Positions 26,511 to 61,978 of a stretch of 64,000 bases of DNA are shown here, piece after piece. Positions within the stretch are counted from its first letter, which is position 1. The number at the start of each line of letters is the position of its first letter. The DNA lies in IMG/VR virus record IMGVR_UViG_3300021964_000012, positions 1-64,000 of that record. One strand, given 5' to 3'. Both the position numbers and the translations under genes were made by a program. The notes beneath the pieces are model-generated. The model saw only the letters and a program-made list of their open reading frames with translations. It was not told the DNA's origin and made no database searches.

Positions 26511-27927
26511 AGGTGATGGTGTTGATGAGAACTTCAAAAGTGATTTCTTATCAGATGCAGAACGTGCTGAACAAAAGTTAAATACTGTATCACCAAGTTT
26601 TTGTTTAGCTAAATGGAAGCAACTTAGTTTGCATTTAACAACTGGTATGAATAATAGTTGTTATCATCCTCCATTGCATAGGGCAGATGCAAACGCAATC
26701 AGAGACAATCCTAGTGCATTGCATAACACAGAACACAAAAAACAACAACGTAAATTGATGTTGGAAGGTACGCGACCCACTGAGTGTAGTTACTGCTGGG
26801 CTATGGAAGACAATGGTAAACTCAGTGACAGACACTATCGTTCAGGTGAGCCTTGGGCAATTAAAGACTTTGAAACTATAAAAAATTCTTCATGGGATCA
26901 AGATATTACTCCTAGTTATGTTGAAGTAGATTTTAATAGTGCATGTAATCTCAGTTGCAGTTATTGTTCTCCCCAGTATAGTTCAACATGGATGAAAGAA
27001 ACACAACGTGAAGGTGCATGGCCAACATCAACACCACACAATGATCCTAGTCACTTTGTAGGAGAACGCAGGCCCATACCTGCAAGAGAACACAATCCAT
27101 ATGTAGAAGCATTTTGGGAGTGGTGGCCTACACTTTATCCAGAACTTGAACATTTTAGAATGACCGGTGGCGAACCAATGATGGATAAAAACACATATCG
27201 TGTTTTTGATTACGTGCTACAAAATCCTTCGCAAAAGTTACATTTAAGTACAACTTCAAATTTCAGTGTAGAAGAAAAACTTTGGCAACGTTACAAAGCA
27301 TATGTCACTATGCTTTGCGAAAGTCCAGGTACAGTTGAACATTTTATGCAATATGTGAGTCTGGACGGTATGTTTAAGCCAGCAGAATACATGCGTCATG
27401 GTTTAGATTTTAATTTGCTCTGGGATCGAGTAAATCAATTTTTGAACGACATACCAGAACGCAGTAGTATCACTTTTATAATTACTATGAATAATCTTAG
27501 TGTAACCACACTGAAGAATCTGTTTGCTGGTATACTTGGACTTAGGCAAATATACAGTAACACCTATCAACGTGTATGGTTTGATACACCTGTACTACGT
27601 ACACCTACCTGGCAGAGTTTGCAGTTATTGCCAGAAAGTTATGTATATGAACTTGAGCTTTGCAAGACGTGGATGAATGATCAATTAGAAAAACCTGAAA
27701 CACGTTTTAAAGGATTTAAAGATTACGAAGTTAACAGGCTAGACAGAGACATTGCTTGGATGCGTAACGGACAACATCTCGATCCTGTCTATATTAACAA
27801 AAACAAAGCAGACTTCTACAGGTTTTTTAACGAACACGATAGACGTAGAGGCACAGACTTTTTAAAAACTTTTCCTGAAATGTCATCTTGGTGGGAAGAG
27901 TGCAAATATTTGGCTAGTAAACAATAA
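26488..27927 (+). CDS. Radical SAM enzyme with N-terminal SPASM/twitch-like module (subfamily A)
   Basis: CLAKW..SCYHP..CSYCW; CNLSCSYC (CxxxCxxC); TGGEP; start at 26488 or 26473. Confidence 0.85.
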   Translation: MTNIKQNKGDGVDENFKSDFLSDAERAEQKLNTVSPSFCLAKWKQLSLHLTTGMNNSCYHPPLHRADANAIRDNPSALHNTEHKKQQRKLMLEGTRPTECSYCWAMEDNGKLSDRHYRSGEPWAIKDFETIKNSSWDQDITPSYVEVDFNSACNLSCSYCSPQYSSTWMKETQREGAWPTSTPHNDPSHFVGERRPIPAREHNPYVEAFWEWWPTLYPELEHFRMTGGEPMMDKNTYRVFDYVLQNPSQKLHLSTTSNFSVEEKLWQRYKAYVTMLCESPGTVEHFMQYVSLDGMFKPAEYMRHGLDFNLLWDRVNQFLNDIPERSSITFIITMNNLSVTTLKNLFAGILGLRQIYSNTYQRVWFDTPVLRTPTWQSLQLLPESYVYELELCKTWMNDQLEKPETRFKGFKDYEVNRLDRDIAWMRNGQHLDPVYINKNKADFYRFFNEHDRRRGTDFLKTFPEMSSWWEECKYLASKQ

Positions 27928-27942
27928 GCGATAACTACATTT

Positions 27943-28776
27943 ATGAAAGTTATAGTTACAGGATCCGGTGGTTTCTTAGGAAGCCACACAGTAAAATATT
28001 TCCGCAATAAAGGTCACGAAGTCACTGCATTTACACAAGATGTACGTCGTAACCTGCCTTACGAAAACTTTGATTGTTTGTGTCATTTTGCTGCCTATGT
28101 TGGTGGACGTAAAGGTATTGATAATAATAAATGGCTTATTACTGAAAATATAGAAATTGATAGAATTACATTTAGATGGGCTGAAGAATGGTGTAAGAAA
28201 ATAATCTATCCTAGCAGTTGTGCGGCCTATCCTCTGCACCTACAAGAAATGCCTGACACACCGATGCAAGAAGAACAGTTTGGAAGTAGTAAAACTTTTG
28301 ACATATACGGGCTTGCTAAAGTTGTTGCAGAAAGTATGCTTAAAACATTACACATTCCTGTACACGTCATGCGACCTTTTAGCATATACGGCCCTGGACA
28401 AGACTTGGATTATCCGATACCTGCAATAATACAAAGAGCAAAGAAAGGTGAGTGTAGTGTGTGGGGAAGTGGTACACAAACAAGAGACTGGGTTTACATA
28501 GATGATGCACTGAAAATATTTGAATACCTACTACACAAACAAGAATCTACTACAGTAAATATTGCAACAGGCAAAGCAATAACATTCAAAGAAATAGCAG
28601 AAACAGTATATAAGTTAATGCATGGTGTAAAAATTCCTGTGAAGACACAAACAGACCAACCCGAAGGTGCTGGACATAGGGTTGGTAGCACTGAGCGTAT
28701 GAGCAGTCTTGGGCTGAGATGTGATATACCAATTGAATACGGAATTAGAAAGATGATCGAATGGTCACAAGAATAG
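27943..28776 (+). CDS. NAD-dependent epimerase/dehydratase
   Basis: TGSGGFLG, YGLAK (YxxxK), YGPGQ, TRDWVYIDD; TAACTA 5 nt before ATG. Confidence 0.9.
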   Translation: MKVIVTGSGGFLGSHTVKYFRNKGHEVTAFTQDVRRNLPYENFDCLCHFAAYVGGRKGIDNNKWLITENIEIDRITFRWAEEWCKKIIYPSSCAAYPLHLQEMPDTPMQEEQFGSSKTFDIYGLAKVVAESMLKTLHIPVHVMRPFSIYGPGQDLDYPIPAIIQRAKKGECSVWGSGTQTRDWVYIDDALKIFEYLLHKQESTTVNIATGKAITFKEIAETVYKLMHGVKIPVKTQTDQPEGAGHRVGSTERMSSLGLRCDIPIEYGIRKMIEWSQE

Positions 28777-29819
28777 GCACACACTTTCCTTTAGATTGGG
28801 CTTATGGAAAAGATGAATTATATATCTTTGATAAAACGCACAGTCAAATTGATAAAAAGTTTCCAAATCAGCGTAACTTGTTAATTAATACCACATGGTT
28901 TGGCAGTCAATTTGGTGATAATAACGACTGCTGGACAGAAGCGATGAATTTAGAAGGTAAATTTACTAATCTATTTTTATTATGTATTATTGATCCAATA
29001 TATCTTTTTGAAGAAGATCTAGAAAAAATAATAAACAAGTACAATATTAAAAACATATATCGAATCGGAATGTTCGAAGGTGAAGCAATGGAATGGAACT
29101 TTCATGCACTTATTGCCAACGACCGCATGCCTGAATATAAGGAAGAAGAGGTATTAATGCAAAGTGCAGACTTTGCGTATATGCTATATCAAAGAAAACC
29201 AAGACTGCATCGAGTTGAAATTACCAATATTTTAAGAGAACAACCGCATCTGTTAGAACGTGGTATTGTTACATTAGGTGGAGTAGCAAAAGATGGAACA
29301 GATTGGCACCAAGGTCTTGAAGTTATTCCAATGACAATAGATGATCTACCGTCGGCATACAAGCAGACAGACGGAGATGATGACGATCATGCTGGAGTTC
29401 CAAATGATCTTGTAACAATTGGACGCCTTGATTTGTGGCAAAACCATTTTTTAAATGTGGTAAGCGAAACAGAATTTGACGAATGGAAACCTGTGTTTAT
29501 GACAGAAAAAATTTGGAAGCCAATGATAGGACTACGTCCGTTTCATGTGCATGGTAATCCAAGATCTTATCAATGGTTAAGAGACAGAGGATTTCGAACA
29601 TTTAATCATTATTGGAAACATTTGCCGGTTGAGACAATTACAGAAGAATACGGTCAACATAATGCACTAATGGATGTAATAAATTATCTAGTGGATATGC
29701 CAAGATTAGAAATAGAACAAATGTACCTTGACATGTTACCAGATTTGCGTTATAATAAAGCTCGCCTTAAAGAATTTAGTAAAGAACAAAAATATAAAAT
29801 GGAGAACTTGTTTGCCTAA
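28761..29819 (+). CDS. TEK-motif putative glycosyltransferase 2
   Basis: FLNVVSET..MTEKIWKPMIGLRPF..LRDRGFRTF. Confidence 0.55.
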   Translation: MVTRIGTHFPLDWAYGKDELYIFDKTHSQIDKKFPNQRNLLINTTWFGSQFGDNNDCWTEAMNLEGKFTNLFLLCIIDPIYLFEEDLEKIINKYNIKNIYRIGMFEGEAMEWNFHALIANDRMPEYKEEEVLMQSADFAYMLYQRKPRLHRVEITNILREQPHLLERGIVTLGGVAKDGTDWHQGLEVIPMTIDDLPSAYKQTDGDDDDHAGVPNDLVTIGRLDLWQNHFLNVVSETEFDEWKPVFMTEKIWKPMIGLRPFHVHGNPRSYQWLRDRGFRTFNHYWKHLPVETITEEYGQHNALMDVINYLVDMPRLEIEQMYLDMLPDLRYNKARLKEFSKEQKYKMENLFA

Positions 29820-31170
29820 GCAACCAAACGAGACTGATCTAGCATATAAAGAACGTGTACTTAATCCACTTAGTGATAGCATGTGTGGAGCCAAATGGTA
29901 TAATGCAACTATATGGTTAGGCTCAGGCATGACAACTAGTTGCCATCATCCACTTCCACATCATGTAAGTGTAGAGAATGTTATTGCTAATCCTAAGGCA
30001 CTACACAACACGCCACATAAAAAACATGAGCGTTTGCAGATGCAATATGGCGAGCGTCCAAAGGGTTGCGAGTATTGTTGGAAAGTAGAAGACATAGGCA
30101 GAGACAACATCAGTGATAGGGTTTACAAGAGTGTAATCTACGATGATGAAGCACTCAAACATGCCCATGAAACCGACCACAATGAGGACATAGACTTAAA
30201 AACACTAGAAATAGCATTTGATCGTACTTGTAACCTAGCATGCAGTTATTGTAATCCTGCTTTTAGCACCACATGGGTAAAAGATATAAAGAAGAACGGT
30301 GCATATCAAGGCCTCGTAAGCGATGGCCGCAATCATTTTACACATCCACATGATAGCTCGCAGTTGTATAGGTTCAACGAAACTAATCCTTACATCGAAG
30401 CGTTCTTTAAATGGTGGGAATCAGATCTGCACAGAACTTTACAAGAATTACGCATAACAGGTGGAGAACCAATGATGAGCGGACACCTGTGGAAACTATT
30501 AGACTGGTTCAAAGAAAACAAAGGCGCAAGTAAAACACGCATTGCTATCAACAGTAATCTACAGTGTAGCACAGATGATATAGAAAAACTACTTGATCGG
30601 GCTGATAGTGCTCCGCTGGACATTTATACAAGTAACGAAAGCATAGTAGATCAAGCAGAATACATACGTGATGGACTTGACTGGAACACATGGCAGACAA
30701 ACTTTGAAATGTTGGCCTCAAGCAATAAGTTACGTGGTTTGCACAACATGTGTACAATTAATGCATTGTGTTTGGAGTCATTGCCAGAATTTTTAGATTA
30801 TTTACTGAATATAAAAGCAAAATATGGCAGAGACTTTCCTAGTTTTACACTTAATATACTTCGATTTCCTAGTTTTCAAAGTGCATTAGCATTACCTGAC
30901 CAAATACGCTCGGCATACAAAGATCGATTACAACATTGGTTTGATCTCAATGTAGACAACAAACTATTTCATGAACATGAACTTAATCAAACACAACGTT
31001 TATTAGATTACTTAGATGTAGTTAAAACTCCGCACAGTGAAGCATTTGAGACACCAAAACTACACAACGACTTTGTAAAATTTTATACACAGTATGATAT
31101 CAGACGTAATAAAAATTTTAATAAAGTATTTCCAAGTATGAAAGAATGGTTTAATGAGTTACAACTATAA
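29812..31170 (+). CDS. Radical SAM enzyme, N-terminal SPASM/twitch (subfamily A)
   Basis: CGAKW..SCHHP..CEYCW; CNLACSYC; TGGEP; likely TTG start at 29812 with GGAG at 29801. Confidence 0.85.
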   Translation: MPKQPNETDLAYKERVLNPLSDSMCGAKWYNATIWLGSGMTTSCHHPLPHHVSVENVIANPKALHNTPHKKHERLQMQYGERPKGCEYCWKVEDIGRDNISDRVYKSVIYDDEALKHAHETDHNEDIDLKTLEIAFDRTCNLACSYCNPAFSTTWVKDIKKNGAYQGLVSDGRNHFTHPHDSSQLYRFNETNPYIEAFFKWWESDLHRTLQELRITGGEPMMSGHLWKLLDWFKENKGASKTRIAINSNLQCSTDDIEKLLDRADSAPLDIYTSNESIVDQAEYIRDGLDWNTWQTNFEMLASSNKLRGLHNMCTINALCLESLPEFLDYLLNIKAKYGRDFPSFTLNILRFPSFQSALALPDQIRSAYKDRLQHWFDLNVDNKLFHEHELNQTQRLLDYLDVVKTPHSEAFETPKLHNDFVKFYTQYDIRRNKNFNKVFPSMKEWFNELQL

Positions 31171-32437
31171 CAGTAGCGATCCAATAAAAATAAAACTAAG
31201 TGACTTAGAAGAACGTGAACGTTTCTTATTAAGTGAAAGCAAGACTTTTTGCATGTATCCATGGATACACTTACATGCATATCCAACTGGTGAAGCATAT
31301 CCTTGTTGTCATGCTGAAATGGGTGTAGGACAGGTAGGCAACTGCAAAACAAATACAATGTTAGAAATTTGGAATAGCCCTGAACAAAAGAAACTACGTC
31401 AAGATATGTTAACTGAAACCAAAAATGACGCATGCGGAAGATGCTATGAACAAGAAGCATCAGGATTCTTTTCAGGTAGACAAAGTGCAAACAAGCATCA
31501 TGGACACCACATACACAGAACACAAGACACAACTGTCGAGGGTGAGTATAAAGATTTTGAAATGACCTATTGGGATATACGTTTTTCAAACTTGTGTAAT
31601 CTAAGTTGTCGGAGTTGTGGACATATATTTTCTAGTAGTTGGCATAAAGACCAGACTGCTCTTGCTGGCCCCGAATGGGCAAAAAATAACAAGGTGTTAA
31701 ACTATGCAGGACGGTTTAAAACTGATATGATGGAACAGTTAATGGAGCATCTTGACTATGTAGAACAAATATACTTTGCTGGTGGTGAACCACTGATGAT
31801 GGATGAACACTATGTGATACTTGAAGAGCTTGAACGTAGAGGCCGTTTTGATGTGCGACTCATTTACAATACAAATTTTACGCATGTTCAACTTAAAGAA
31901 AGATTGGTTTTTGATTATTGGAAAAAGTTTGACAGTGTAGCAGTTGGTGCAAGTTTGGATGCAATGGGTCCTCGTGCTGAGTACATACGTAAAGGCGCCA
32001 AATGGGACATAGTTGAACAAAACAGACATAAAATGATGGAAATATGTCCAAAGGTTGACTTTTATATTTCACCAACACTTAGTATCATGAATGCCTTGCA
32101 CATACCAGACTTTCACAGAGACTGGGTAAACAAAGGATTGCTTCAAGCACAGGATCTAAACATCAATATATTACAAGATCCTAATTACTATAGAATTGAC
32201 ATTGCACCACAAGCGTACAAAGATCAAATCGTTGATGCGTATGAGAAACATCTTGTTTGGTTACGCCCACAAGATAAACTAAACAGAGCAACTGTTGGTT
32301 TTGAAAGTGCATTACAGTATTTAAAAACAGACAACACGCACTTGTTGGAAAAATTTTGGCAAAAGACTCAACAACTTGATGGCATTCGCAATGAAAATAT
32401 TCTTGACATTATACCAGAATTGGATGCATTAAAGTGA
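31154..32437 (+). CDS. Radical SAM enzyme, N-terminal SPASM/twitch (subfamily B)
   Basis: CMYPW..PCC..CGRC; CNLSCRSC; AGGEP. Confidence 0.9.
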   Translation: MSYNYNSSDPIKIKLSDLEERERFLLSESKTFCMYPWIHLHAYPTGEAYPCCHAEMGVGQVGNCKTNTMLEIWNSPEQKKLRQDMLTETKNDACGRCYEQEASGFFSGRQSANKHHGHHIHRTQDTTVEGEYKDFEMTYWDIRFSNLCNLSCRSCGHIFSSSWHKDQTALAGPEWAKNNKVLNYAGRFKTDMMEQLMEHLDYVEQIYFAGGEPLMMDEHYVILEELERRGRFDVRLIYNTNFTHVQLKERLVFDYWKKFDSVAVGASLDAMGPRAEYIRKGAKWDIVEQNRHKMMEICPKVDFYISPTLSIMNALHIPDFHRDWVNKGLLQAQDLNINILQDPNYYRIDIAPQAYKDQIVDAYEKHLVWLRPQDKLNRATVGFESALQYLKTDNTHLLEKFWQKTQQLDGIRNENILDIIPELDALK

Positions 32438-33639
32438 AGTTACCACATGAAAAGTTTTGTGTGTTGCCATGGGTAAGTTTAGAAACATCACCAATTGGAA
32501 CAGTCCGACCTTGTTGTCTAGCAGAAGATGAAATAACAGACAATAACGGCAAAAAATATAGTTTGCTTAATACCGACCTAAATAAAATACACAATAGTGA
32601 TTATATGCAAACATTGCGTAAAGAGTTTTTAGATGGCATTCAACCTGAAACTTGTCGTAAATGTTGGAACGAAGAACGCTCAGGTCGTACCTCAAAACGG
32701 ATGCACACACTTAACAGATTAGAACATATTGTTACAGACACCGAATGGACTGTTGATGCAAAACCCTTGGTGTTTATAGATTTTAAACTTGGCAACATAT
32801 GTAATTTAAAATGTAGAATATGTGGATCGTGGAGCTCGAGTACGTTTGCTGCTGAAGAAGTTAAATTTGAGGGTAAAGACAGCTTTCATTATCAAATGCT
32901 TAAAGATGGAGCATGGCCAAGACGCAATCAAAAGTTTTGGACAGAGATTGATAAACTAATGGAGCAAGTACAATACTTGGAGTTTACTGGTGGCGAACCA
33001 TTTATGATACAAGAACATTTTGATTTACTACAAAGAATGGTTGATCAAGGCATTGCATCAAATGTAGAAATACATTACAATACAAACGGAACACACTTTC
33101 CAGACCATGCAGAATCAATTTGGAAAAATTTTAAATTGGTTGAGATTGCTTTTAGCATAGACGATGTTGGTCCACGTTTTGAATATCAACGTGCAAATGC
33201 CGTATGGGATGAAGTAAATGCAAACATGGATAGATTTGAGGCTCTGCGTGATCGCAACACAAACATACAATTGCAAGTGTGTTCAACTGTGAATATTTTT
33301 AACGTTATGTACTTGGAAGGCTTGGCAAATTGGATTGACCAACGTAATTTTGATTTTATATACTGGAACATGCTACACGAAGCACGGCATCACAGTGTTG
33401 GTACTCTGCCTGACCGTGCAAAAGAGCTTGTATCTAATAAATTAATGTCTGCTAAGGTATCTAATTTTCATATGAAAGAGTTTGTCAAGATAGTAGATTT
33501 TATAGAAGCAGGTATCAGTTTAGATGGCACAGAACTACGTAGAAGTGTGCAACAGGTAGACCGTCGAAGATCACAGGATTTGCGTATACACCATCCAGAA
33601 CTCGCAGATGCAATAGATTACGAAGGACCAAACACATGA
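32434..33639 (+). CDS. Radical SAM enzyme, N-terminal SPASM/twitch (subfamily B)
   Basis: CVLPW..PCC..CRKC; CNLKCRIC; TGGEP; GTGA overlap start. Confidence 0.9.
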   Translation: MKLPHEKFCVLPWVSLETSPIGTVRPCCLAEDEITDNNGKKYSLLNTDLNKIHNSDYMQTLRKEFLDGIQPETCRKCWNEERSGRTSKRMHTLNRLEHIVTDTEWTVDAKPLVFIDFKLGNICNLKCRICGSWSSSTFAAEEVKFEGKDSFHYQMLKDGAWPRRNQKFWTEIDKLMEQVQYLEFTGGEPFMIQEHFDLLQRMVDQGIASNVEIHYNTNGTHFPDHAESIWKNFKLVEIAFSIDDVGPRFEYQRANAVWDEVNANMDRFEALRDRNTNIQLQVCSTVNIFNVMYLEGLANWIDQRNFDFIYWNMLHEARHHSVGTLPDRAKELVSNKLMSAKVSNFHMKEFVKIVDFIEAGISLDGTELRRSVQQVDRRRSQDLRIHHPELADAIDYEGPNT

Positions 33640-34202
33640 TATTAGTTGTCATAGCACTAGAAGAAGAATTACCAGGATCGTTACCAAGCGGATATAAAAA
33701 ATTAATCACAGGCGTAGGGAAAGTAAATGCAAGTATCGCACTTACTGCTGAGTTATGCCATAACAATCATTATACAAAAATTATAAACTACGGTTCAGCA
33801 GGCGGCAGTAAAGAAATTAAAGGCGAACTTGTAGGAGTAAGTGCAGTTATTGAACGTGATATGGATTGCACTCCTCTTGGCTTGCCATTGTATGTTTCAC
33901 CTGGCGATGAAGAACAAATGATAGTGTGTCAGACCAAACACGACAGTCTGTTTGTGTGCGGAACAGGAGACAGTTTTAGCGTGCCGCACATTAACTATCA
34001 AATATGCGAAATGGAAGCATACGCACTCGCAAAAGTTTGTCATAAATTCAATATTCCTTTTGACTGTTACAAGTACATTTCAGACAGTGACGCAGACGGT
34101 GAAGATCAAGGCCGTGAATGGGAAGCAAATGTTCACAAGGGTGCAGAACTGTTTAGAAGAACAATACTCACTGAACAAGAACAGATAGCATTTGAATGGT
34201 AG
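33636..34202 (+). CDS. mtnN: 5'-methylthioadenosine/S-adenosylhomocysteine nucleosidase
   Basis: ITGVGKVNA, INYGSAG, TGDSF, EMEAYALAKVC, KYISD motifs. Confidence 0.8.
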   Translation: MILVVIALEEELPGSLPSGYKKLITGVGKVNASIALTAELCHNNHYTKIINYGSAGGSKEIKGELVGVSAVIERDMDCTPLGLPLYVSPGDEEQMIVCQTKHDSLFVCGTGDSFSVPHINYQICEMEAYALAKVCHKFNIPFDCYKYISDSDADGEDQGREWEANVHKGAELFRRTILTEQEQIAFEW

Positions 34203-35506
34203 ACAGGCCTGAACAAAAGCCTGAAACCTTATGCATGGCTCCGTGGACACACACCTATCTATCTCCGCAGACCGAACGCAGAATGTGTTGTGCTAGTCGT
34301 GAATCAGCACAGAGCTTTAAACAGTATATTGATACTGGATCGGGCACAGGAACATACAATCCGCAAACACTAGAAGAACATTGGAACGGCGATCATATGC
34401 GTAGTGTAAGAAGGCGTATGATGGCTGGTGAAAAACTAAGCGAGTGCGAAGTTTGTACAGATAAACTTCTTAATACTGATGTGTATAGAACTTACTTTTG
34501 GCACTTGTTTCAACACCGTTATGATGAGCTATGGACCAGTACCGACGACACTGGTTGGACCTCAATGAAGCCAATCAGTTGGGACTATAGATTTTCAAAC
34601 TTGTGTAACTTTAAATGTCGTACCTGTGGTGATATGCTTAGTTCAAGTTGGGAAACAGAACAACGTAAACACAACATGGTTAATTTAGACAACCCAAAAA
34701 ACAACTGGATGCGGCCAGAGGTTCGTAAAGAAATAAGCAAATTTCAGGATACACAAATTGAAAAAGAGTTTTCAGATGCAGTTGAAGAACATAGAATTGA
34801 AGAAATCTATTGGGTAGGTGGCGAACCACTGATGTATGAACAACACTGGCGATACATGAAACGCATAGTCGAACTTGGCGATGGGCCTGGATTGTATGCA
34901 CGTTATAATAGCAATCTTAGTAGAGTGAATTATAAAGGTCAAAATCTCTATAAAGATATACTTGCTAATATACGTGATTGGCAGATATGTGCCAGTATTG
35001 ATGGCACAGGTGCTATTGGTGAATATATAAGAACTGGACTAAACTATGATCAATTTGTAGATAATTTTAAACAAGGTTGTGATATCGCAACGCACAGACG
35101 GCAAATGCGTTTAGACTTTACTCTTACACTACCTGGATTGTTTGAAGTTGTACACATGCAACAATTAGCCGATAGATTAGGTGTTGACATCCTTGCTAAA
35201 GTTATTTTTACATTTACGCCAGATATTATTATGTCACCACTTGCATTGCCTCGTAAATTATTAGATCGCATGGTCAACCAACTAATTAACAATAATGTAT
35301 TAGGAACTGCATTGCAAGACGTGCTTGTCCAACTTAAAAATAGACCAACGATGGAAGAACAGTTTCCTGATTACATACAAGGTATGCAAGAAGGAAAAAG
35401 GCGTGTACTCAAATTAGAAGAGATTAGAAATGATAAGTTTACTATGAAAGATATACTCAGCAAAGATCAAGAAGTGTTAGATTGGTGGAATAGCATTGAT
35501 GCTTGA
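34196..35506 (+). CDS. Radical SAM enzyme, N-terminal SPASM/twitch (subfamily B)
   Basis: CMAPW..MCC..CEVC; CNFKCRTC; VGGEP. Confidence 0.9.
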   Translation: MVDRPEQKPETLCMAPWTHTYLSPQTERRMCCASRESAQSFKQYIDTGSGTGTYNPQTLEEHWNGDHMRSVRRRMMAGEKLSECEVCTDKLLNTDVYRTYFWHLFQHRYDELWTSTDDTGWTSMKPISWDYRFSNLCNFKCRTCGDMLSSSWETEQRKHNMVNLDNPKNNWMRPEVRKEISKFQDTQIEKEFSDAVEEHRIEEIYWVGGEPLMYEQHWRYMKRIVELGDGPGLYARYNSNLSRVNYKGQNLYKDILANIRDWQICASIDGTGAIGEYIRTGLNYDQFVDNFKQGCDIATHRRQMRLDFTLTLPGLFEVVHMQQLADRLGVDILAKVIFTFTPDIIMSPLALPRKLLDRMVNQLINNNVLGTALQDVLVQLKNRPTMEEQFPDYIQGMQEGKRRVLKLEEIRNDKFTMKDILSKDQEVLDWWNSIDA

Positions 35507-36554
35507 TCGGGTTGAAATGCAATTGCGTGGGCCAAATGGTTTGTTGCCTGTATTCTTTGATGTGTATGATAATAGTTTAAGTCGTAAATGGTTAACTGCA
35601 TTTAATAATTTACTGGATAATAAATTACATCTTGAAAAAAACTATTGCTTTTTTGGATTTCCTGACAATGAACGTAACTTAGACTTTTTAGCCAGTGAAA
35701 TCAATAGAACTATTGCAGGGATAAATGGCAGCAACATTGACTATGTTATAAAAGATTATTTTTCTGCTGAAAATATGGTTGAAAAAAATTGGAGTGAACT
35801 TAACCAAGCAGTGAAAATTGATATAAATCATACAAAATTCAACCAGTTGCATTTATACTTTGAGGAAACACAAGGTGTGAGTGGTGCAATGAGCGAACAT
35901 TATACTAATGCTGATGCAGAAACACGTTGGTATATCAGGCAACTTAATTTATTATGTCATGAAGCAGAATGTCTTATAATAAGTTTAGGAAGAAAAGATG
36001 CGGCTCCGGAATGGATACGTCCTAGTAATGTTATGTGTTGGTTGCATGCTCCAAGATTTGTACTAGATGCTGAAGATTATAATCAATTTGGAGTTGACAC
36101 AATAGCAAGAGATCACGGTGGTGTATACGTTGGTGTTAACAAAGCAGTAGGAAAACATCATTATGAGGTTTTTAGCGACGAAGGCAGAGACAGTAGAATT
36201 GACGAGCTTACAACCACCACACTTAAACCACAAACAGAAGCTGCAGGTGATTTTGACATAGAATGGGGTAAAGCAACTTCTGACCAAAGTTTTATGCAAA
36301 CAAAACTAAATGATTTTAGAACATGGCTCAAGGCAAACAATTTTGATCCAGATGACCCTAGTTTGACAATAGGTCATCCAAAAATTGGACAGGTTGATTT
36401 AAAACACAGTTTTGGCACAGAGGATTTTTTGCAAGTGTTAGCAAAATTATCACAATATCTTGATGTATACAGTATCAAAACCAGTAAAAGTTATTGCGAA
36501 TACGATTACACATGGCATCAAAGTAAAGAACTACAAATACCTTTAATTGATTGA
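35496..36554 (+). CDS. Hypothetical protein (HLYFE / LCHEAE possible metal ligands)
   Basis: 352-aa ORF coupled to the rSAM gene; no family recognised. Confidence 0.6.
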   Translation: MMLDRVEMQLRGPNGLLPVFFDVYDNSLSRKWLTAFNNLLDNKLHLEKNYCFFGFPDNERNLDFLASEINRTIAGINGSNIDYVIKDYFSAENMVEKNWSELNQAVKIDINHTKFNQLHLYFEETQGVSGAMSEHYTNADAETRWYIRQLNLLCHEAECLIISLGRKDAAPEWIRPSNVMCWLHAPRFVLDAEDYNQFGVDTIARDHGGVYVGVNKAVGKHHYEVFSDEGRDSRIDELTTTTLKPQTEAAGDFDIEWGKATSDQSFMQTKLNDFRTWLKANNFDPDDPSLTIGHPKIGQVDLKHSFGTEDFLQVLAKLSQYLDVYSIKTSKSYCEYDYTWHQSKELQIPLID

Positions 36555-36579
36555 CAACTACACTAAAGGAGTGTATAAT
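36551..36579 (+). promoter_or_regulatory. Consensus sigma70 promoter TTGACA-17-TATAAT upstream of metK
   Basis: TTGACA 36551-36556, TATAAT 36574-36579; overlaps a stop and a start codon. Confidence 0.55.
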
Positions 36580-36682
36580 GATAAAATGGTTCAAGAATCT
36601 TATCAGCAAAATAAAACTAGAAATAAGATATCGTAAAAAATTAAAAGAACTGAGGAAAAGGGATCCTTTTATATACAAATGA
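36578..36682 (+). CDS. Small basic protein, 34 aa (MIKWFK..RYRKKLKELRKRDPFIYK)
   Basis: AAGGAG SD; ATGA overlap with metK; below the ORF-track cutoff. Confidence 0.7.
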   Translation: MIKWFKNLISKIKLEIRYRKKLKELRKRDPFIYK

Positions 36683-37779
36683 GTTATATTTTCACATCAG
36701 AGTCAGTGAGCAAAGGCCATCCTGACAAAATAGCAGACCAAATATCAGATGCATTAGTCGATGCTGGTTTGCAAGCCGGTGACGAAACAACACGTGTTGC
36801 AGTTGAAACAATGGTAACAACAAATTATGTTGTACTAGCAGGAGAAGTAAAAAACTTCAACGTCACTGATGAACAAGTTGAGCAGATTATTAGAGACAAA
36901 GTTAAAGAGATCGGCTATGAGCAAGAAGGCTTTCATTGGGATAAACTTAAAGTTGATAACAAAACAATCAACAACCAGTTGCACTCTCAAAGTTCAGACA
37001 TTGCTCTAGGTACAGATGATTTTGGTGCAGGTGATCAAGGTATTATGTTTGGATATGCTTGCAATGACAATGAAGCAATGATGCCAGCACCTATCTATTA
37101 TTCACACGAACTACTAAAAGAACTAAATGACATGCGAGCAGATGGTTATCATTTTTTGCTACCAGATGCAAAGAGTCAAGTTAGTGTTGAATATGAAGGC
37201 GGAAAAGTAAAACGTATTGATCAAGTTGTTATAAGTCATCAACACAAAGAAGGTTTTCAACATAGTGTTATAGCACCTTTCAAAACCGCAGTAGAAAAAG
37301 TACTAGGCAATTTAATAGATGACAATACAGTATTTCATTTTAATCCTACTGGCAAATTTGTTATTGGTGGACCCGATGGTGACACTGGACTTACTGGTCG
37401 TAAAATTATTGTTGATACCTATGGTGGTTTTGCTCCTCACGGTGGTGGGGCATTTAGTGGAAAAGATCCTACTAAGGTAGACCGTAGTGCGGCCTATATG
37501 GCTCGTTGGTTGGCAAAGAATGTAGTTGCAGACGATATGGCTGACTGGTGTCAAATACAATTAAGTTATGCTATTGGCGTAAAAGAACCTACCAGCATCT
37601 ATGTAGATTCAAATGGACACAACAGAAGTATACAAAAGTTTATCAGAGACAATATTGATCTTACGCCAAAAGGTATAATTGATAGATTTGATCTTTTTAA
37701 ATTTTATGAATACAGTGCAAATTGCACATACGGACACTTTGGCAACAAAGATGTTCCTTGGGAAAAGGTAGGCTGGTAA
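36679..37779 (+). CDS. metK: S-adenosylmethionine synthetase
   Basis: FTSESVSKGHPDKIADQISD, GAGDQGIMFGYA, GGGAFSGKDPTKVDRSAAY. Confidence 0.97.
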   Translation: MSYIFTSESVSKGHPDKIADQISDALVDAGLQAGDETTRVAVETMVTTNYVVLAGEVKNFNVTDEQVEQIIRDKVKEIGYEQEGFHWDKLKVDNKTINNQLHSQSSDIALGTDDFGAGDQGIMFGYACNDNEAMMPAPIYYSHELLKELNDMRADGYHFLLPDAKSQVSVEYEGGKVKRIDQVVISHQHKEGFQHSVIAPFKTAVEKVLGNLIDDNTVFHFNPTGKFVIGGPDGDTGLTGRKIIVDTYGGFAPHGGGAFSGKDPTKVDRSAAYMARWLAKNVVADDMADWCQIQLSYAIGVKEPTSIYVDSNGHNRSIQKFIRDNIDLTPKGIIDRFDLFKFYEYSANCTYGHFGNKDVPWEKVGW

Positions 37780-37889
37780 TGTTTCCACTTAATGATTATG
37801 ATCCAAATTTTTGGGTTAAATGGGCAGCAAATATTATAATTATATTACTTGTATTTTTTGTTGGCATGTCATTATTAGGATTTTTCTAA
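37779..37889 (+). CDS. Small membrane protein, 36 aa
   Basis: MFPLNDYDPNFWVKWAANIIIILLVFFVGMSLLGFF; fills the gap exactly with TAATG and TAA-ATG junctions. Confidence 0.6.
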   Translation: MFPLNDYDPNFWVKWAANIIIILLVFFVGMSLLGFF

Positions 37890-39395
37890 ATGAGAATACT
37901 AGGAGTTAGTGCAGGATTCCACGATGCCGCTCTTACTGTGGTACACAATCACAGAATACTGTTTGCAGGTCATGCTGAACGATATAGCAAAAAGAAAAAC
38001 GATCCTACTATTCCTCAAAGTCTTCAAGAACACGTTCTTAAATATGGACCTTTTGACATGATAGTCTACTATGAAAAGCCATATCTAAGACAACTGCGTA
38101 AAATTAAAAGTGGCGAAAATTGGGGAGGTGCTTGGCGTACACGTACCGAACTCGTACGTACAATTCCTTATATAATGGAAAACACCAAAGCAGAAATAAG
38201 CAGTGTTGGACATCATCTATCGCATGCGGCCGCAGGCTTTCAAACATCACCATTCGATGATGCAACAGTAGTTGTTATTGATGCAATAGGTGAGTCGGAT
38301 ACTATAAGCATATACCACGCCTACTACAATGGTGCATGTTTAGCAGGTGAACATGCTAAGGCAAATTACAAACTATTATACAAACAAACCTATCCACACA
38401 GTATTGGTATGTTCTACAGTGCAGTTACACAACGTTGTGGACTGAAGCCAATGGACGAAGAGTACATCACAATGGGCATGGCCGCATATGGGGATGCCGA
38501 CAAGGCATACAAAACATTAAAACGTGCAACTGTACAATTCGCAGATATTCCACTGTTTAAAGAAAACCTACACATAGGTATTGATGATGTTGAGTTTGCA
38601 CCTGATGTTACTGCTGAAGACATAGCTGCCGCAGGACAACAGTTATGCGAAGAAATGGTTATGGCTGTAATGCGTAGGGCAAAGGCCATTGGCACTAGTA
38701 AAAATCTAGTGTACATGGGAGGAGTTGCACTTAACTGTGTGATCAATCGTCGATTGGGTGAACTGTTTAACAAAATATGGATAATGCCCAACCCAGGAGA
38801 TGCAGGAAGCAGTTTGGGAGCCGCGGCCTACACATATGGTAGAGACATAAACTTTACAACACCATACTTGGGCTCAAATATAGCAGGTGAATATCCAGTG
38901 GATGAACTGTTAAAAGAATTAGAAACAAATCAAATTGTTGGAGTCGCAAATGGACGTGCAGAATTTGGTCCAAGAGCGTTAGGTAACAGAAGTTTACTAG
39001 CCGATCCGCGTGGACGAAATATCAAGGATCGAGTGAATGAGATAAAACGTAGACAAAAGTTTAGACCGTTTGCTCCTGTGATACTTGAAGAACATGTGCA
39101 TGACTATTTTGTAATGCCTCTTTATCAACCCACAAGTCGCTACATGCAGGTAGTAGCACGTTGCACAAAGCCAGATAAGTTTCCTGCTATTATACACGTA
39201 GATGGCACATCAAGAGTACAAACAGTTCCTGACAATGATAGTGGTATAAGACGGTTGTTGAGTGCGTGGTATAAAAAAACCGGTTGTCCTATGTTGTTGA
39301 ATACCAGTTTAAACATAAGAGGCGAGCCAATGGTTGATGATAGATTTGATGCTAATCGCTTTCAAAAAGAGTATGGAGTAACTGTATGCAGTTAG
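37890..39395 (+). CDS. O-carbamoyltransferase, NodU/CmcH family
   Basis: GFHDAA..ERYSKKKND, HHLSHAAAGF, GGVALNC, PGDAGSSLG, RAEFGPRALGNRS, FRPFAP, LLNTSLN. Confidence 0.92.
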   Translation: MRILGVSAGFHDAALTVVHNHRILFAGHAERYSKKKNDPTIPQSLQEHVLKYGPFDMIVYYEKPYLRQLRKIKSGENWGGAWRTRTELVRTIPYIMENTKAEISSVGHHLSHAAAGFQTSPFDDATVVVIDAIGESDTISIYHAYYNGACLAGEHAKANYKLLYKQTYPHSIGMFYSAVTQRCGLKPMDEEYITMGMAAYGDADKAYKTLKRATVQFADIPLFKENLHIGIDDVEFAPDVTAEDIAAAGQQLCEEMVMAVMRRAKAIGTSKNLVYMGGVALNCVINRRLGELFNKIWIMPNPGDAGSSLGAAAYTYGRDINFTTPYLGSNIAGEYPVDELLKELETNQIVGVANGRAEFGPRALGNRSLLADPRGRNIKDRVNEIKRRQKFRPFAPVILEEHVHDYFVMPLYQPTSRYMQVVARCTKPDKFPAIIHVDGTSRVQTVPDNDSGIRRLLSAWYKKTGCPMLLNTSLNIRGEPMVDDRFDANRFQKEYGVTVCS

Positions 39396-40228
39396 AACAC
39401 ACACGAACAAGATATCATCGAAACTTTGCCTATTGGAAAAATGACGAAGTTATTGGAAAAAATCTTAGAGAGTATGGCGAATATCAGCAAAAAGAAATTG
39501 ATCTATTAGTTGGTTTATTAAACAGTGTAAATAGCAAACAAAAAGTGGTTTGGGACATTGGTGCCAACATAGGAGTTCATACTATGGCATTTTCTAAACA
39601 TAGTACTTTTGTTTGCAGTTGGGAAGCAAATCCACAAAACTTCAAACTACTACAAATGAATACACAAGGAAAACTTGCTCCAAATGTAAAAGTACACAAT
39701 GTTGCTATTAGCAATGGTAAAAAAGACACAATACAAATACAAGACTTTGATCAGTCTAAGTCTAGTAACAAAGGTGAATTATCAATTGTAGAAAAAGGTG
39801 GAGTAGAAATTTCAGCAAGAAGCATCGACAGTTATATGATGAATTATCCTCTTCCTAGTTTGATAAAAATTGATGTAGAAGGTCATGAACTTGAAGTACT
39901 GCAAGGTGCACTTGTAATGCTAAAAACAGTAAAACCAATATTGTATTTTGAAACTGCTGATAAAGTGAGTTATGCAGAACATATAACATTTCTTAAAGAT
40001 CTTGAATATCGCATGTGGTGGTTTGCATGTCCTAATTTTAATAAAAATAATTATAATAAAAATGACAATAATACCTGGGGTAGAAGTGTTATCTGTAGTA
40101 TACTCGCAATACACAAGGATGTGGTTGGATTAAATACTATAGAATTGCAAGAAGTAATTGATGCCGACGATCATTGGTTAAAGATGGATTGGGATTACGA
40201 TACAGGACTTACAAGAGCAATAGAATGA
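39386..40228 (+). CDS. FkbM-family SAM-dependent methyltransferase
   Basis: WDIGANIGVHT, LIKIDVEGHELEVLQGA. Confidence 0.88.
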   Translation: MQLEHTRTRYHRNFAYWKNDEVIGKNLREYGEYQQKEIDLLVGLLNSVNSKQKVVWDIGANIGVHTMAFSKHSTFVCSWEANPQNFKLLQMNTQGKLAPNVKVHNVAISNGKKDTIQIQDFDQSKSSNKGELSIVEKGGVEISARSIDSYMMNYPLPSLIKIDVEGHELEVLQGALVMLKTVKPILYFETADKVSYAEHITFLKDLEYRMWWFACPNFNKNNYNKNDNNTWGRSVICSILAIHKDVVGLNTIELQEVIDADDHWLKMDWDYDTGLTRAIE

Positions 40229-40539
40229 CCAAAGAAAACGATTTAAGACAACGTGTAATAGAATCACTTCAAACAGTATTTGATCCTGAGATGCCCAGTA
40301 TAAGTGTTTACGATTTAGGTTTAATCTATAAGATAGAGATCAAAGGTGACTGGGTTGGCATAGAACATACACTAACTAGTATGGCATGTCCTTTTGCAGA
40401 TCAAATTTGTGCCGATATAGAACATGCAGTTATTAGTACACCTGGCGTGCGTGCTATTGATAGACAATTGGTATTTGAACCTATTTTTACAATAGAAATG
40501 GTTCCTGAAGAAACCAAACTAATAATGGGCTGGTACTAA
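40225..40539 (+). CDS. SufT/DUF59-type Fe-S cluster assembly protein
   Basis: LQTVFDPEM..VYDLGLIY..TLTSMACP; start reassigned to 40225 (ATGA overlap). Confidence 0.85.
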   Translation: MTKENDLRQRVIESLQTVFDPEMPSISVYDLGLIYKIEIKGDWVGIEHTLTSMACPFADQICADIEHAVISTPGVRAIDRQLVFEPIFTIEMVPEETKLIMGWY

Positions 40540-61884: not shown

Positions 61885-61902
61885 AGTGTACTTAGTAAAA
61901 AA

Positions 61903-61978
<76 letters not shown>

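What the first reader, a model, noticed from the sequence alone, without database searches (positions are those of the whole stretch)
33636..40539. Dedicated SAM/Fe-S logistics: MetK, MTA/SAH nucleosidase and SufT embedded among the consumers
Seen: mtnN sits between rSAM genes 4 and 5; metK and a sufT-like gene follow in the same operon with the FkbM methylase. Known: MetK makes SAM; MtnN hydrolyses 5'-deoxyadenosine and SAH, the inhibitory products of rSAM enzymes and methylases; SufT/DUF59 supports Fe-S maturation under high demand. Inference: supply, waste removal and cofactor loading are co-encoded, implying very high (stoichiometric, virion-scale) flux. This is the opposite strategy to SAM-lyase phages such as T3.
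Basis: partly seen in the sequence, partly recalled or inferred. Interest (0 to 1): 0.8.

Follow-up and report, generated by a model that had tools for sequence, protein, structure and literature searches.

The report
Phage radical-SAM array with SAM/Fe-S helpers
A marine jumbo phage packs a SAM synthetase, an MTA/SAH-type nucleosidase and a small Fe-S maturation factor into an array of five radical-SAM enzymes, which looks like a built-in support kit for those enzymes, although each helper gene on its own is already known from viruses.

Summary
On the + strand, 26473-40539 carries five N-terminal-twitch radical-SAM (rSAM) genes. A 188-aa nucleosidase sits between the fourth and fifth with overlapping start and stop codons.

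MetK is a full equivalog. The nucleosidase has the MTAN fold and catalytic residues but scores below every curated MTAN cut-off. The DUF59 protein is SufT-like, also below cut-off.

About 15 distinct IMG/VR contigs of a marine/estuarine jumbo-phage clade keep the layout, and all three genes are under strong purifying selection.

The three links to the rSAM genes differ in strength:
- **DUF59:** sits beside such arrays in several independent arrangements.
- **Nucleosidase:** embedded only in this clade; its relatives elsewhere mostly stand alone.
- **MetK:** a family-wide backbone gene with its own conserved consensus promoter. In relatives it is flanked by adenine phosphoribosyltransferase, a QueE-like rSAM or SufE.

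My best reading is a cis-encoded support module: SAM resynthesis, 5'-deoxyadenosine/SAH removal and cluster loading. "Stoichiometric, virion-scale flux" is unsupported. Viral metK/mtnN and DUF59-plus-rSAM phages were already published, so this is a new variant of a known kind.

The parts
26473..27927 (+). rSAM0, N-terminal-twitch radical SAM enzyme (start codon uncertain)
   Evidence: NF033640 at 299 bits against cut-off 170. CNLSCSYC motif.
27943..28776 (+). NAD-dependent sugar epimerase/dehydratase
   Evidence: PF01370, 2e-31. Weak GDP-fucose synthase and LegB-like hits.
28761..29819 (+). Conserved protein of unknown function
   Evidence: No Pfam hit. Present in some relatives.
29728..29756 (+). 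Exact sigma-70 consensus promoter (TTGACA-17-TATAAT) upstream of rSAM1
   Evidence: One of only 2 exact matches in the 64 kb window, where 0.06 are expected. Conserved in close relatives.
29812..31170 (+). rSAM1, N-twitch radical SAM (probable start TTG 29812, GGAG 8 nt upstream)
   Evidence: NF033640 at 296 bits. Relatives are 450-452 aa. Sequence read.
31154..32437 (+). rSAM2, N-twitch radical SAM
   Evidence: NF033640 at 405 bits. The family is almost entirely viral in the ESM Atlas.
32434..33639 (+). rSAM3, N-twitch radical SAM
   Evidence: NF033640 at 342 bits. AF2 pLDDT 86. Nearest solved folds are viperin, SkfB, CteB, anSME, BlsE and MoaA.
33636..34202 (+). Short (188 aa) MTAN-like purine nucleosidase
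   Evidence: PF01048. AF2 pLDDT 88 with top Foldseek hits all MTANs, best 4pr3. E11, M126-E127 and D150 are invariant, matching E. coli E12, M173-E174 and D197. ATGA overlap with rSAM3 and 7-nt overlap with rSAM4.
34196..35506 (+). rSAM4, N-twitch radical SAM
   Evidence: NF033640 at 283 bits. CNFKCRTC motif.
35499..36554 (+). Conserved unknown protein that always follows rSAM4
   Evidence: No family hit. Conserved at 67-80% in all clade members. Start ATG 35499.
36551..36579 (+). Exact sigma-70 consensus promoter about 100 nt upstream of metK
   Evidence: Conserved at the same distance from metK in the clade and in the distant L040/L042 lineage.
36578..36682 (+). Conserved 34-aa basic small ORF; its stop overlaps the metK start (ATGA)
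   Evidence: AAGGAG Shine-Dalgarno sequence. The peptide is conserved with synonymous changes in L003, L096 and L119, and is kept in L098, where metK is missing.
36679..37779 (+). MetK, methionine adenosyltransferase (366 aa, compact form)
   Evidence: TIGR01034 at 434 bits against cut-off 309. Three Pfam domains. Substrate and metal motifs are intact against solved bacterial MetK chains (alignment shown: 5t8s; 1fug E. coli also listed).
37779..37889 (+). 36-aa hydrophobic small ORF, not conserved in relatives
   Evidence: Sequence read. Absent in L119/L120 and L004, where carbT directly follows metK.
37890..39395 (+). NodU/CmcH-type carbamoyltransferase
   Evidence: PF16861 at 1e-50 and PF02543 at 4e-35.
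39386..40228 (+). FkbM-family SAM-dependent methyltransferase (absent in many relatives)
   Evidence: TIGR01444 at 88 bits against cut-off 37.7. Missing in L004-L006, L085, L096 and L119.
40225..40539 (+). DUF59 / SufT-like protein, 104 aa
   Evidence: PF01883 at 58 bits against cut-off 23.5. TIGR02945 at 90 bits, below cut-off 143. Conserved HTLTSxxCP cysteine. ATGA overlap with fkbM.
60928..61917 (-). Sixth radical-SAM gene in the window, outside the array and of another subfamily
   Evidence: PF04055 at 35.7 bits. CNLTCSNC motif.

Best explanation
The three genes form a cis-encoded support set for the phage's own radical-SAM array.

Proposed cycle (inferred, not measured):
1. Each N-twitch rSAM enzyme probably holds two [4Fe-4S] clusters. 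Per turnover it splits SAM into methionine and 5'-deoxyadenosine.
2. MetK re-adenylates the released methionine with ATP. It is driven by its own strong host-type promoter.
3. The MTAN-like nucleosidase is translated in step with rSAM3 and rSAM4. It hydrolyses the inhibitory 5'-deoxyadenosine, and SAH from the FkbM methyltransferase, to adenine plus the sugar.
4. The DUF59 protein helps host Fe-S machinery load about ten extra cluster sites.

Shown here: gene identities at family level, intact catalytic motifs, coupled gene junctions, conserved synteny and purifying selection.

Inferred: substrate range of the nucleosidase, the Fe-S role of the DUF59 protein, and the functional coupling itself.

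The links are unequal. DUF59 is tied to such arrays repeatedly. The nucleosidase is tied in this clade only. MetK is a backbone gene of the wider phage family that the array abuts.
For: Gene calls and scores.

- **Nucleosidase:** MTAN fold and invariant catalytic Glu/Glu/Asp.
- **MetK:** motifs intact.
- **DUF59:** conserved Cys.
- **Junctions:** overlapping start and stop codons.
- **Synteny:** the order rSAM0-3 / nucleosidase / rSAM4 / unknown / MetK / carbT / (fkbM) / DUF59 is kept at 52-93% amino-acid identity in about 15 distinct IMG/VR contigs and in ENA contigs.
- **Selection:** dN/dS is 0.02-0.17 for nucleosidase and MetK and 0.05-0.22 for most DUF59 comparisons (one outlier 0.41, vs L098). 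The nucleosidase is more conserved than its rSAM neighbours.
- **DUF59 next to N-twitch rSAMs in other arrangements:** L327 (heads a six-rSAM array), L338-341, L108, and L103/L278/L279.
- **Cellular homologues of the nucleosidase:** 0 of 80 loci have an rSAM-motif ORF within 6 kb, so the embedding is a phage innovation.
- **Cluster demand:** the rSAMs carry an extra N-terminal Cys4 site. Their nearest solved folds are 5'-dAdo-releasing enzymes.
- **MetK neighbours in relatives:** QueE-like rSAM, adenine phosphoribosyltransferase, or SufE.
- **Promoter:** a consensus promoter in front of metK is conserved.
- **Established knowledge:** 5'-dAdo inhibits rSAM enzymes and MTAN-type nucleosidases dispose of it (PMC8102628, PMC10986504). 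SufT/DUF59 supports Fe-S maturation under high demand (PMC4982691, PMC9045647).
Against: - MetK occurs across the phage family regardless of N-twitch arrays. Only 21 of 66 informative loci have one within 10 kb.
- MetK similarities do not track the array. The L096 MetK is 75% identical to the window's but 86-88% identical to MetKs on other IMG/VR contigs, at least some of which show no N-twitch array in the held flanks.
- Outside this clade, only about 8 of 69 viral nucleosidase loci have a true rSAM within 10 kb.
- In another lineage MetK and the nucleosidase are adjacent without any rSAM (L232, L241).
- L098 keeps the array but lacks MetK there. L103, L278 and L279 have four rSAMs plus carbT and DUF59 but no nucleosidase or MetK nearby.
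- 55 of 70 DUF59 loci show no rSAM in the (often short) flanks.
- The nucleosidase and the DUF59 protein score below all curated equivalog cut-offs.
- No biochemical data exist. Transcription in nature is not proven.
Confidence: 0.58

Rival explanations
1. These are general SAM-cycle auxiliary genes, not rSAM helpers. MetK and the nucleosidase raise SAM supply and remove SAH/MTA for methyltransferases (DNA or sugar methylation) or for general host takeover. Their position beside the rSAM array would then be an accident of a variable genomic island.
For: - MetK is a backbone gene next to a 5'-3' exonuclease, PMM, an AAA ATPase and ThyX in most relatives.
- MetK and the nucleosidase are adjacent without rSAMs in L232/L241.
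- An FkbM methyltransferase lies in the same operon.
- Viral metK and mtnN are already catalogued as methionine/organosulfur AMGs (bioRxiv 10.1101/2021.01.05.425418).
- 137 phage records carry metK.
Against: - The nucleosidase is wedged between two rSAM genes with overlapping codons in every clade member, not next to the methyltransferase.
- fkbM is often lost while the nucleosidase, MetK and DUF59 stay.
- 42 of 66 informative MetK loci have some rSAM (QueE-like or N-twitch) within 10 kb upstream.
Confidence: 0.2
2. The nucleosidase is a pathway enzyme, as HpnG is with HpnH or MqnB/MTAN with MqnE. One rSAM would add the 5'-deoxyadenosyl radical to a substrate, and the nucleosidase would then strip adenine. 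The result is a C-C-linked deoxyribosyl unit in the final sugar or virion modification.
For: - Strict placement between rSAM3 and rSAM4, with higher conservation than either neighbour.
- Weak similarity to futalosine hydrolase (TIGR03664, 38 bits).
- The cluster is rich in sugar-modifying enzymes.
- Known precedents, from my own knowledge: HpnH/HpnG in hopanoid synthesis and MqnE/MqnB in the futalosine pathway.
Against: - It is 50-57% identical to stand-alone cellular and viral homologues with no rSAM nearby.
- It falls below the futalosine-hydrolase cut-off and has no HpnG hit.
- Related arrays (L103, L278, L279) work without it nearby.
- The nearest solved folds of rSAM3 are hydrogen-abstracting enzymes. 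That comparison is weak: TM 0.3-0.47.
Confidence: 0.1
3. The genes compensate for the host rather than serve high flux. The host, probably a streamlined marine bacterium, may lack or poorly express an MTAN, SufT or enough MetK. The phage then supplies the minimum needed for any rSAM chemistry at all.
For: - The phage is marine/estuarine.
- The helper genes are single-copy and small.
- The short nucleosidase family is patchily spread among marine lineages: SAR86, SAR116, SAR202, Marinimicrobia.
Against: The host is unknown, so this cannot be tested here. It is a refinement of the best explanation (same activities, different reason) rather than an exclusive alternative.
Confidence: 0.1

Closest known systems
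Bacterial MTA/SAH nucleosidase (Pfs/MtnN), including its role in clearing 5'-deoxyadenosine for radical-SAM enzymes
   Same: Same fold (top 50 Foldseek hits are all MTANs or futalosine hydrolases). Same catalytic Glu/Glu/Asp and GSAGG motif. The proposed role is the one established in bacteria (PMC8102628, PMC10986504).
   Different: It is 188 aa against about 230 aa. It belongs to an uncharacterised short subfamily; the nearest solved structure is Brucella 4pr3. Every member tested, viral or cellular, scores below all curated MTAN equivalog cut-offs. It is phage-encoded and embedded in an rSAM array, whereas 0 of 80 cellular homologue loci have an rSAM motif nearby.
Marine T4-like environmental viral genomes with many rSAM genes plus Fe-S genes (Nishimura et al. 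2017, PMC5332604)
   Same: Marine phages that combine up to 12 rSAM genes with Fe-S-related genes, including paaD (a DUF59 protein). The authors interpreted these as serving virally encoded Fe-S proteins.
   Different: Those genomes carry scaffold genes (A-type carrier, IscU) and are about 183 kb and T4-like. MetK and a nucleosidase were not reported as part of the set. Here the DUF59 gene is in the same operon as the rSAMs, in a 328-kb jumbo phage, and no scaffold gene was found in the window.
Viral organosulfur/methionine-cycle AMGs metK and mtnN (Kieft et al., bioRxiv 10.1101/2021.01.05.425418)
   Same: Virus-encoded metK and mtnN with conserved motifs and dN/dS below 1. The same holds here.
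   Different: That work reads them as methionine-degradation or sulfur AMGs and found no universal gene organisation. Here they sit inside an rSAM array, which suggests cofactor supply and by-product removal for phage enzymes.
SufT (DUF59-only protein) of Staphylococcus aureus and Mycobacterium tuberculosis
   Same: A single DUF59 domain of about 100 aa with the conserved Cys. SufT is needed when Fe-S demand is high (PMC4982691, PMC9045647).
   Different: It scores below the TIGR02945 and TIGR03406 cut-offs. It is not next to sufBCD. It scores similarly against PaaD models.
HpnH/HpnG and MqnE/MqnB (rSAM adenosylation followed by a PNP-family nucleosidase)
   Same: A PNP_UDP_1 nucleosidase encoded next to rSAM enzymes.
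   Different: It does not meet the futalosine-hydrolase cut-off and has no HpnG hit. The adjacent rSAMs are of another family. This is kept as a rival explanation, not a membership.
Phage T3 SAM lyase
   Same: A phage gene that acts on the host SAM pool.
   Different: Opposite direction: it destroys SAM rather than making it, and the protein is unrelated. This contrast is comment only.

Membership tests
MetK (methionine adenosyltransferase, TIGR01034) | Three S-AdoMet synthetase domains in order (N, central, C) | tested here: met
   PF00438, PF02772 and PF02773 all above cut-off.
MetK (methionine adenosyltransferase, TIGR01034) | Score above the curated equivalog cut-off | tested here: met
   433.9 bits against 309.4.
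MetK (methionine adenosyltransferase, TIGR01034) | Substrate and metal-binding motifs (GHPDK, GAGDQG, DAK, GLTGRK, GGGAFSGKD..KVDRS) | tested here: met
   All are present in the alignment to 5t8s.
MetK (methionine adenosyltransferase, TIGR01034) | SAM synthesis activity | not testable with these tools
   Needs an enzyme assay.
MTA/SAH nucleosidase (MtnN/Pfs) | PNP_UDP_1 fold closest to solved MTANs | tested here: met
   PF01048 at 50.8 bits. AF2 pLDDT 88. Foldseek top hits are MTANs, E about 1e-12, TM 0.7-0.8.
MTA/SAH nucleosidase (MtnN/Pfs) | Catalytic residues equivalent to E. coli Glu12, Glu174 and Asp197 | tested here: met
   E11, E127 and D150 are invariant in 38 homologues. They align to the EME and SD motifs of solved MTANs. 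The Glu12 equivalence rests on motif position, not on a superposition.
MTA/SAH nucleosidase (MtnN/Pfs) | Score above a curated MTAN equivalog cut-off | tested here: not met
   Best MTAN model 58.8 bits against 169. TIGR01704 43 against 73.8. Best overall is PRK05634 'nucleosidase', 81 against 129. Cellular relatives behave the same way.
MTA/SAH nucleosidase (MtnN/Pfs) | Hydrolysis of MTA, SAH and 5'-deoxyadenosine | not testable with these tools
   Needs an enzyme assay. The 5'-substituent pocket was not analysed.
SufT / DUF59 Fe-S assembly factor | DUF59 (PF01883) domain | tested here: met
   58.2 bits against 23.5. Nearest solved structures are DUF59 proteins TTHB138 and TM0487.
SufT / DUF59 Fe-S assembly factor | Conserved cysteine of the T-x-x-x-C-P motif | tested here: met
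   HTLTSMACP is invariant in viral relatives and aligns to TTPGCP.
SufT / DUF59 Fe-S assembly factor | Score above the SUF_assoc or long-SufT equivalog cut-offs | tested here: not met
   TIGR02945 89.9 against 143.4. TIGR03406 69 against 202.6. PaaD models score similarly.
SufT / DUF59 Fe-S assembly factor | Genomic association with sufBCD | tested here: not met
   No suf, isc or A-type carrier gene was found among the window ORFs scanned. The rest of the 328-kb genome was not seen.
SufT / DUF59 Fe-S assembly factor | Role in Fe-S protein maturation | not testable with these tools
   Needs co-expression or a genetic test.
N-terminal-twitch radical SAM (NF033640), the presumed consumers | CxxxCxxC cluster motif and a score above 170 bits | tested here: met
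   All five array genes score 283-405 bits. Motifs are listed.
N-terminal-twitch radical SAM (NF033640), the presumed consumers | N-terminal auxiliary-cluster cysteines | tested here: met
   Two of the four N-terminal Cys are invariant and two nearly so across paralogues.
Futalosine hydrolase / HpnG-type biosynthetic nucleosidase | Score above the curated cut-off (TIGR03664), or any HpnG match | tested here: not met
   38.2 bits against 124.7. No HpnG model is listed at E<=0.01.
Futalosine hydrolase / HpnG-type biosynthetic nucleosidase | Partner rSAM that adenosylates its substrate | tested here: inconclusive
   Neighbouring rSAMs are N-twitch family. The nearest solved folds are hydrogen-abstracting enzymes, but only at TM 0.3-0.47.

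The most novel reading that the evidence does not exclude
The nucleosidase is not a waste remover but a biosynthetic step. One of the flanking N-twitch rSAMs would attach the 5'-deoxyadenosyl radical to a sugar or protein substrate, as HpnH and MqnE do. The nucleosidase would then remove adenine. The phage would thus build a C-C-linked deoxyribosyl (higher-carbon sugar) modification, with MetK supplying SAM as a stoichiometric building block.
Probability: 0.1. Interest if true: 0.8.

Novelty: new variant of a known kind. Interest (0 to 1): 0.5.

Why it matters
If the reading is right, an abundant clade of marine and estuarine jumbo phages carries a self-contained kit for running oxygen-sensitive, product-inhibited radical chemistry inside the host. 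The kit covers cofactor resynthesis, inhibitor removal and cluster loading.

This would recast viral metK and mtnN, so far filed as sulfur or methionine AMGs, as cofactor logistics for phage enzymes. It would also give a practical handle for reconstituting the uncharacterised, almost purely viral N-terminal-twitch rSAM family in vitro: co-express the phage's own helpers.

The related finding that relatives place adenine phosphoribosyltransferase, a QueE-like rSAM or SufE directly beside MetK suggests a wider, modular SAM/adenine/Fe-S hotspot in this phage family.

Tried and rejected
1. **L117 versus L118.** They have identical MetK, one with and one without SufE and a small rSAM. It looked like a natural co-loss experiment, but L117 has runs of N at both places, so this is an assembly artefact.
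2. **Cultured phages are uninformative.** There is no DNA match. N-twitch rSAMs occur only in Vibrio phages K566/K567 at 22% identity. The DUF59 hits are unannotated, mostly short records (2-45 kb; one of 209 kb) attributed to Gram-positive phages or unnamed fecal phages, which I suspect include host DNA.
3. **GTDB genomes.** The scan with rSAM2 found nothing. The paralogue alignment A2 was too divergent to search with.
4. **False rSAM counts.** The CxxxCxxC motif count gave false rSAMs in nucleosidase loci. Six were the DUF5522 Cys-rich extension of the nucleosidase itself. The motif count also missed QueE-like rSAMs, which were recovered by family search.
5. **ESM Atlas.** It gave no lead for the unknown protein 35499-36554.
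6. **RNA evidence.** Two metatranscriptome runs hold short near-identical contigs in rSAM4, the unknown gene, carbT and fkbM. DNA carry-over cannot be excluded, and the depth peak in metK comes from other organisms.
7. **L098 genome.** Whether it has MetK elsewhere was not resolved; its contig is not among the top 80 hits.
8. **Apt, QueE-like, SufE, exonuclease and PMM homologues.** All are absent from this window. The other 264 kb of the genome were not available.

Full report
**What the window is.** The window is the first 64 kb of a 328,292-bp IMG/VR contig; the contig coordinates returned match window coordinates. It is a jumbo myovirus. A baseplate wedge protein is 33-35% identical to those of Atu_ph07, CBB and GAP32-like jumbo phages. 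There is a 4490-aa ORF, ThyX and three tRNAs. G+C is about 36%. No cultured phage matches at DNA level. Near-identical DNA occurs in estuary and marine metagenomes released from 2018 to 2025.

**Checking the observation.** From 26473 to 40539 all genes lie on the + strand. Five encode radical-SAM proteins that pass the NCBIfam model for N-terminal-twitch rSAMs (NF033640, 283-405 bits, cut-off 170) and carry CxxxCxxC.
- The 188-aa ORF at 33636-34202 is a PNP_UDP_1 protein.
- Its start overlaps the rSAM3 stop (ATGA), and its stop overlaps the rSAM4 start by 7 nt.
- After rSAM4 comes a conserved unknown gene (start ATG 35499), then a 34-aa small ORF.
- MetK follows (TIGR01034, 434 bits, cut-off 309), then a 36-aa small ORF.
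- The DUF59 gene starts at ATG 40225, sharing ATGA with the fkbM stop, not at TTG 40174. Relatives align only from that point, and their called genes are 104 aa.

**Are the three proteins what they were called?**
- **MetK: yes.** It has all three domains, exceeds the equivalog score, and keeps every substrate and metal motif when aligned to solved bacterial MetK.
- **The nucleosidase: MTAN-like but unclassified.**
  - An AlphaFold model (pLDDT 88) has MTANs and futalosine hydrolases as its 50 best PDB matches. The best is the short Brucella enzyme 4pr3.
  - In an alignment of 38 homologues, the residues matching E. coli Glu12, Met173-Glu174 and Asp197 are invariant.
  - It nevertheless scores below every curated MTAN, futalosine-hydrolase and 'nucleosidase' cut-off. 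So do its viral and cellular relatives.
  - It belongs to an uncharacterised short subfamily that is widespread in cells: more than 540 loci in GTDB genomes, including SAR86, SAR116, SAR202, Oceanospirillaceae and Chryseobacterium.
- **The DUF59 protein: family member only.** It is a clear PF01883 member with the conserved Cys. It scores below the SufT and SUF-associated cut-offs and about equally against PaaD models. 'SufT-like' is fair; 'SufT' is not shown.

**Conservation.** About 15 distinct IMG/VR contigs, plus ENA contigs of 101 and 215 kb, keep the order rSAM0-rSAM1-rSAM2-rSAM3-nucleosidase-(extra rSAM)-rSAM4-unknown-MetK-carbT-(fkbM)-DUF59. Amino-acid identity is 52-93%. Pairwise dN/dS is 0.02-0.09 for the nucleosidase, 0.04-0.17 for MetK and mostly 0.05-0.22 for DUF59. 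dS is near saturation, so these ratios are rough. The nucleosidase is more conserved than either flanking rSAM.

I could run it only on +/-10 kb flanks.
- **MetK.**
  - It has 488 relatives in IMG/VR. Among 66 of the best 80 loci with enough upstream DNA, MetK is a backbone gene followed by a 5'-3' exonuclease, PMM, an AAA ATPase and ThyX.
  - Directly upstream lies an adenine phosphoribosyltransferase in 30 loci (NF002636, 173 bits, cut-off 125), or a QueE-like rSAM in 22. An N-twitch rSAM lies within 10 kb in 21, and 8 loci have none of these.
  - In a 330-kb relative, SufE precedes MetK.
  - MetK similarities also do not follow the array.
  - MetK is therefore not dedicated to the array, but it sits in a hotspot for SAM users and adenine salvage.
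- **Nucleosidase.** It has 573 viral relatives. Outside the clade, only about 8 of 69 loci have a true rSAM nearby. None of 80 cellular loci has an rSAM-motif ORF within 6 kb. In one lineage MetK and the nucleosidase are adjacent without rSAMs (L232, L241). The embedding is thus an innovation of this clade.
- **DUF59.** It has 254 viral relatives. It lies directly beside N-twitch rSAMs in several different layouts: at the head of a six-rSAM array (L327), immediately before an rSAM (L338-341), between two rSAMs (L108), and after four rSAMs plus carbT (L103, L278, L279). Still, 55 of 70 loci, many of them short, show no rSAM.
- **Exceptions within arrays.** L098 lacks MetK in the array. L103, L278 and L279 lack both MetK and the nucleosidase nearby.

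**The consumers.** Each array rSAM has four conserved N-terminal cysteines in addition to CxxxCxxC, so two clusters per protein are likely. The family is almost wholly viral in the ESM Atlas. A model of rSAM3 (pLDDT 86) is nearest to viperin, SkfB, CteB, anSME, BlsE and MoaA. All of these release 5'-deoxyadenosine, but the matches are weak (TM 0.3-0.47). The surrounding genes are two SDR epimerase/dehydratases, a DegT aminotransferase, a carbamoyltransferase and a methyltransferase. These point to a modified sugar, and the cluster follows tail-fibre-like genes. The product is unknown.

**Expression signals.** The only two exact TTGACA-17-TATAAT matches in the window, against 0.06 expected, lie on the + strand. 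One is about 55 nt before rSAM1 and the other about 100 nt before metK. The second is kept at the same distance from metK across the clade and in the distant L040/L042 lineage. This suggests strong transcription by host RNA polymerase; that is an inference. Two metatranscriptome runs hold short near-identical contigs from the operon, but DNA carry-over cannot be excluded.

**Mechanism proposed.**
1. rSAM turnover yields methionine and 5'-deoxyadenosine.
2. MetK rebuilds SAM from the methionine and ATP.
3. The nucleosidase removes the inhibitory 5'-deoxyadenosine (PMC8102628, PMC10986504), and also SAH from FkbM.
4. DUF59 aids loading of about ten cluster sites, as SufT does under high demand (PMC4982691, PMC9045647).

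Relatives that add an adenine phosphoribosyltransferase next to MetK would also recover the adenine. Every activity here is inferred.

**Rivals.** These are general methionine-cycle AMGs, a biosynthetic HpnG/MqnB-like role for the nucleosidase, and host compensation rather than high flux. They are weighed in the Rival explanations section of this report.

**Novelty.** Viral metK and mtnN are already catalogued. Marine phages that combine many rSAM genes with Fe-S genes, including a DUF59 'paaD', were described in 2017. What is new here:
- the three helpers sit inside one rSAM operon in an abundant jumbo-phage clade;
- the three links have graded specificity;
- MetK has Apt, QueE-like rSAM or SufE as its neighbours in relatives.

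I rate this a new variant of a known kind. The claim of stoichiometric, virion-scale flux has no support in the sequence.

Noticed in passing
window 36578-36682 (+); also L003, L096, L098, L119: A 34-aa basic small ORF ending ...KLEIRYRKKLKELRKRDPFIYK has a strong Shine-Dalgarno sequence, and its stop overlaps the metK start. The peptide is conserved with synonymous changes. It is retained in L098, where metK itself is missing, so it is probably an independent small gene of unknown role.
   Followed up: partly
window 29728-29756 and 36551-36579 (+): These are the only two exact sigma-70 consensus promoters in 64 kb (expected 0.06), and both lie inside the cluster. The -10 box of the second overlaps the small ORF's start codon, so a transcript from it would not encode that ORF. 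How metK is then translated is unclear.
   Followed up: partly
L015, L017-L019, L022-L031, L037-L038, L051-L055, L058-L061, L063, L065-L066, L073-L074, L076 (upstream of metK): In 30 related phage loci an adenine phosphoribosyltransferase lies directly upstream of MetK. In 22 loci a QueE-like radical-SAM enzyme does, and in L118 a SufE does. None of these is present in this window.
   Followed up: partly
P0108, P0115; L241:1460-2242; L221, L225, L229, L238, L242, L257: Some marine homologues of the nucleosidase carry an N-terminal Cys-rich DUF5522 extension (CGHGCLMC). In L241 a DUF5522-like ORF sits between MetK and the nucleosidase. Its function is unknown. It mimics an rSAM motif in simple pattern scans.
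   Followed up: partly
window 4933-18405 (+): A single 4490-aa ORF follows the baseplate wedge gene. It is presumably a giant fibre or structural protein. It was not analysed.
   Followed up: no
L103 versus the window (DUF59 and carbT): The DUF59 protein is 89% identical between the window and L103, while the adjacent carbamoyltransferase is only 53% and rSAM4 62%. This suggests recent exchange of the DUF59 gene or very uneven constraint.
   Followed up: no
P0005 and P0310 (longest contig 539,231 bp): Close relatives of the nucleosidase (87%) and of rSAM3 (83%) each list a longest contig of the same length, 539,231 bp — probably one contig. If so, the cluster may also occur in an even larger phage genome.
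   Followed up: no
L327:377-9000: In a relative, three tail-fibre-like genes (similar to window 19149-20705) directly precede the DUF59-plus-six-rSAM array. The same fibre-then-array order is seen in the window, which hints that the array's product is tied to the fibres.
   Followed up: no
window 60928-61917 (-), next to tRNA-Thr at 61903-61978: A sixth radical-SAM gene of a different subfamily (weak MoaA and viperin-like hits) lies far from the array. Its 5' end overlaps the tRNA-Thr coordinates, so the start codon is probably further in.
   Followed up: no
L117:5100-5210 and about 7800-7900: This ENA scaffold has runs of N exactly where its sister contig L118 has an rSAM and SufE. Gene absence on such scaffolds should not be read as loss.
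   Followed up: yes
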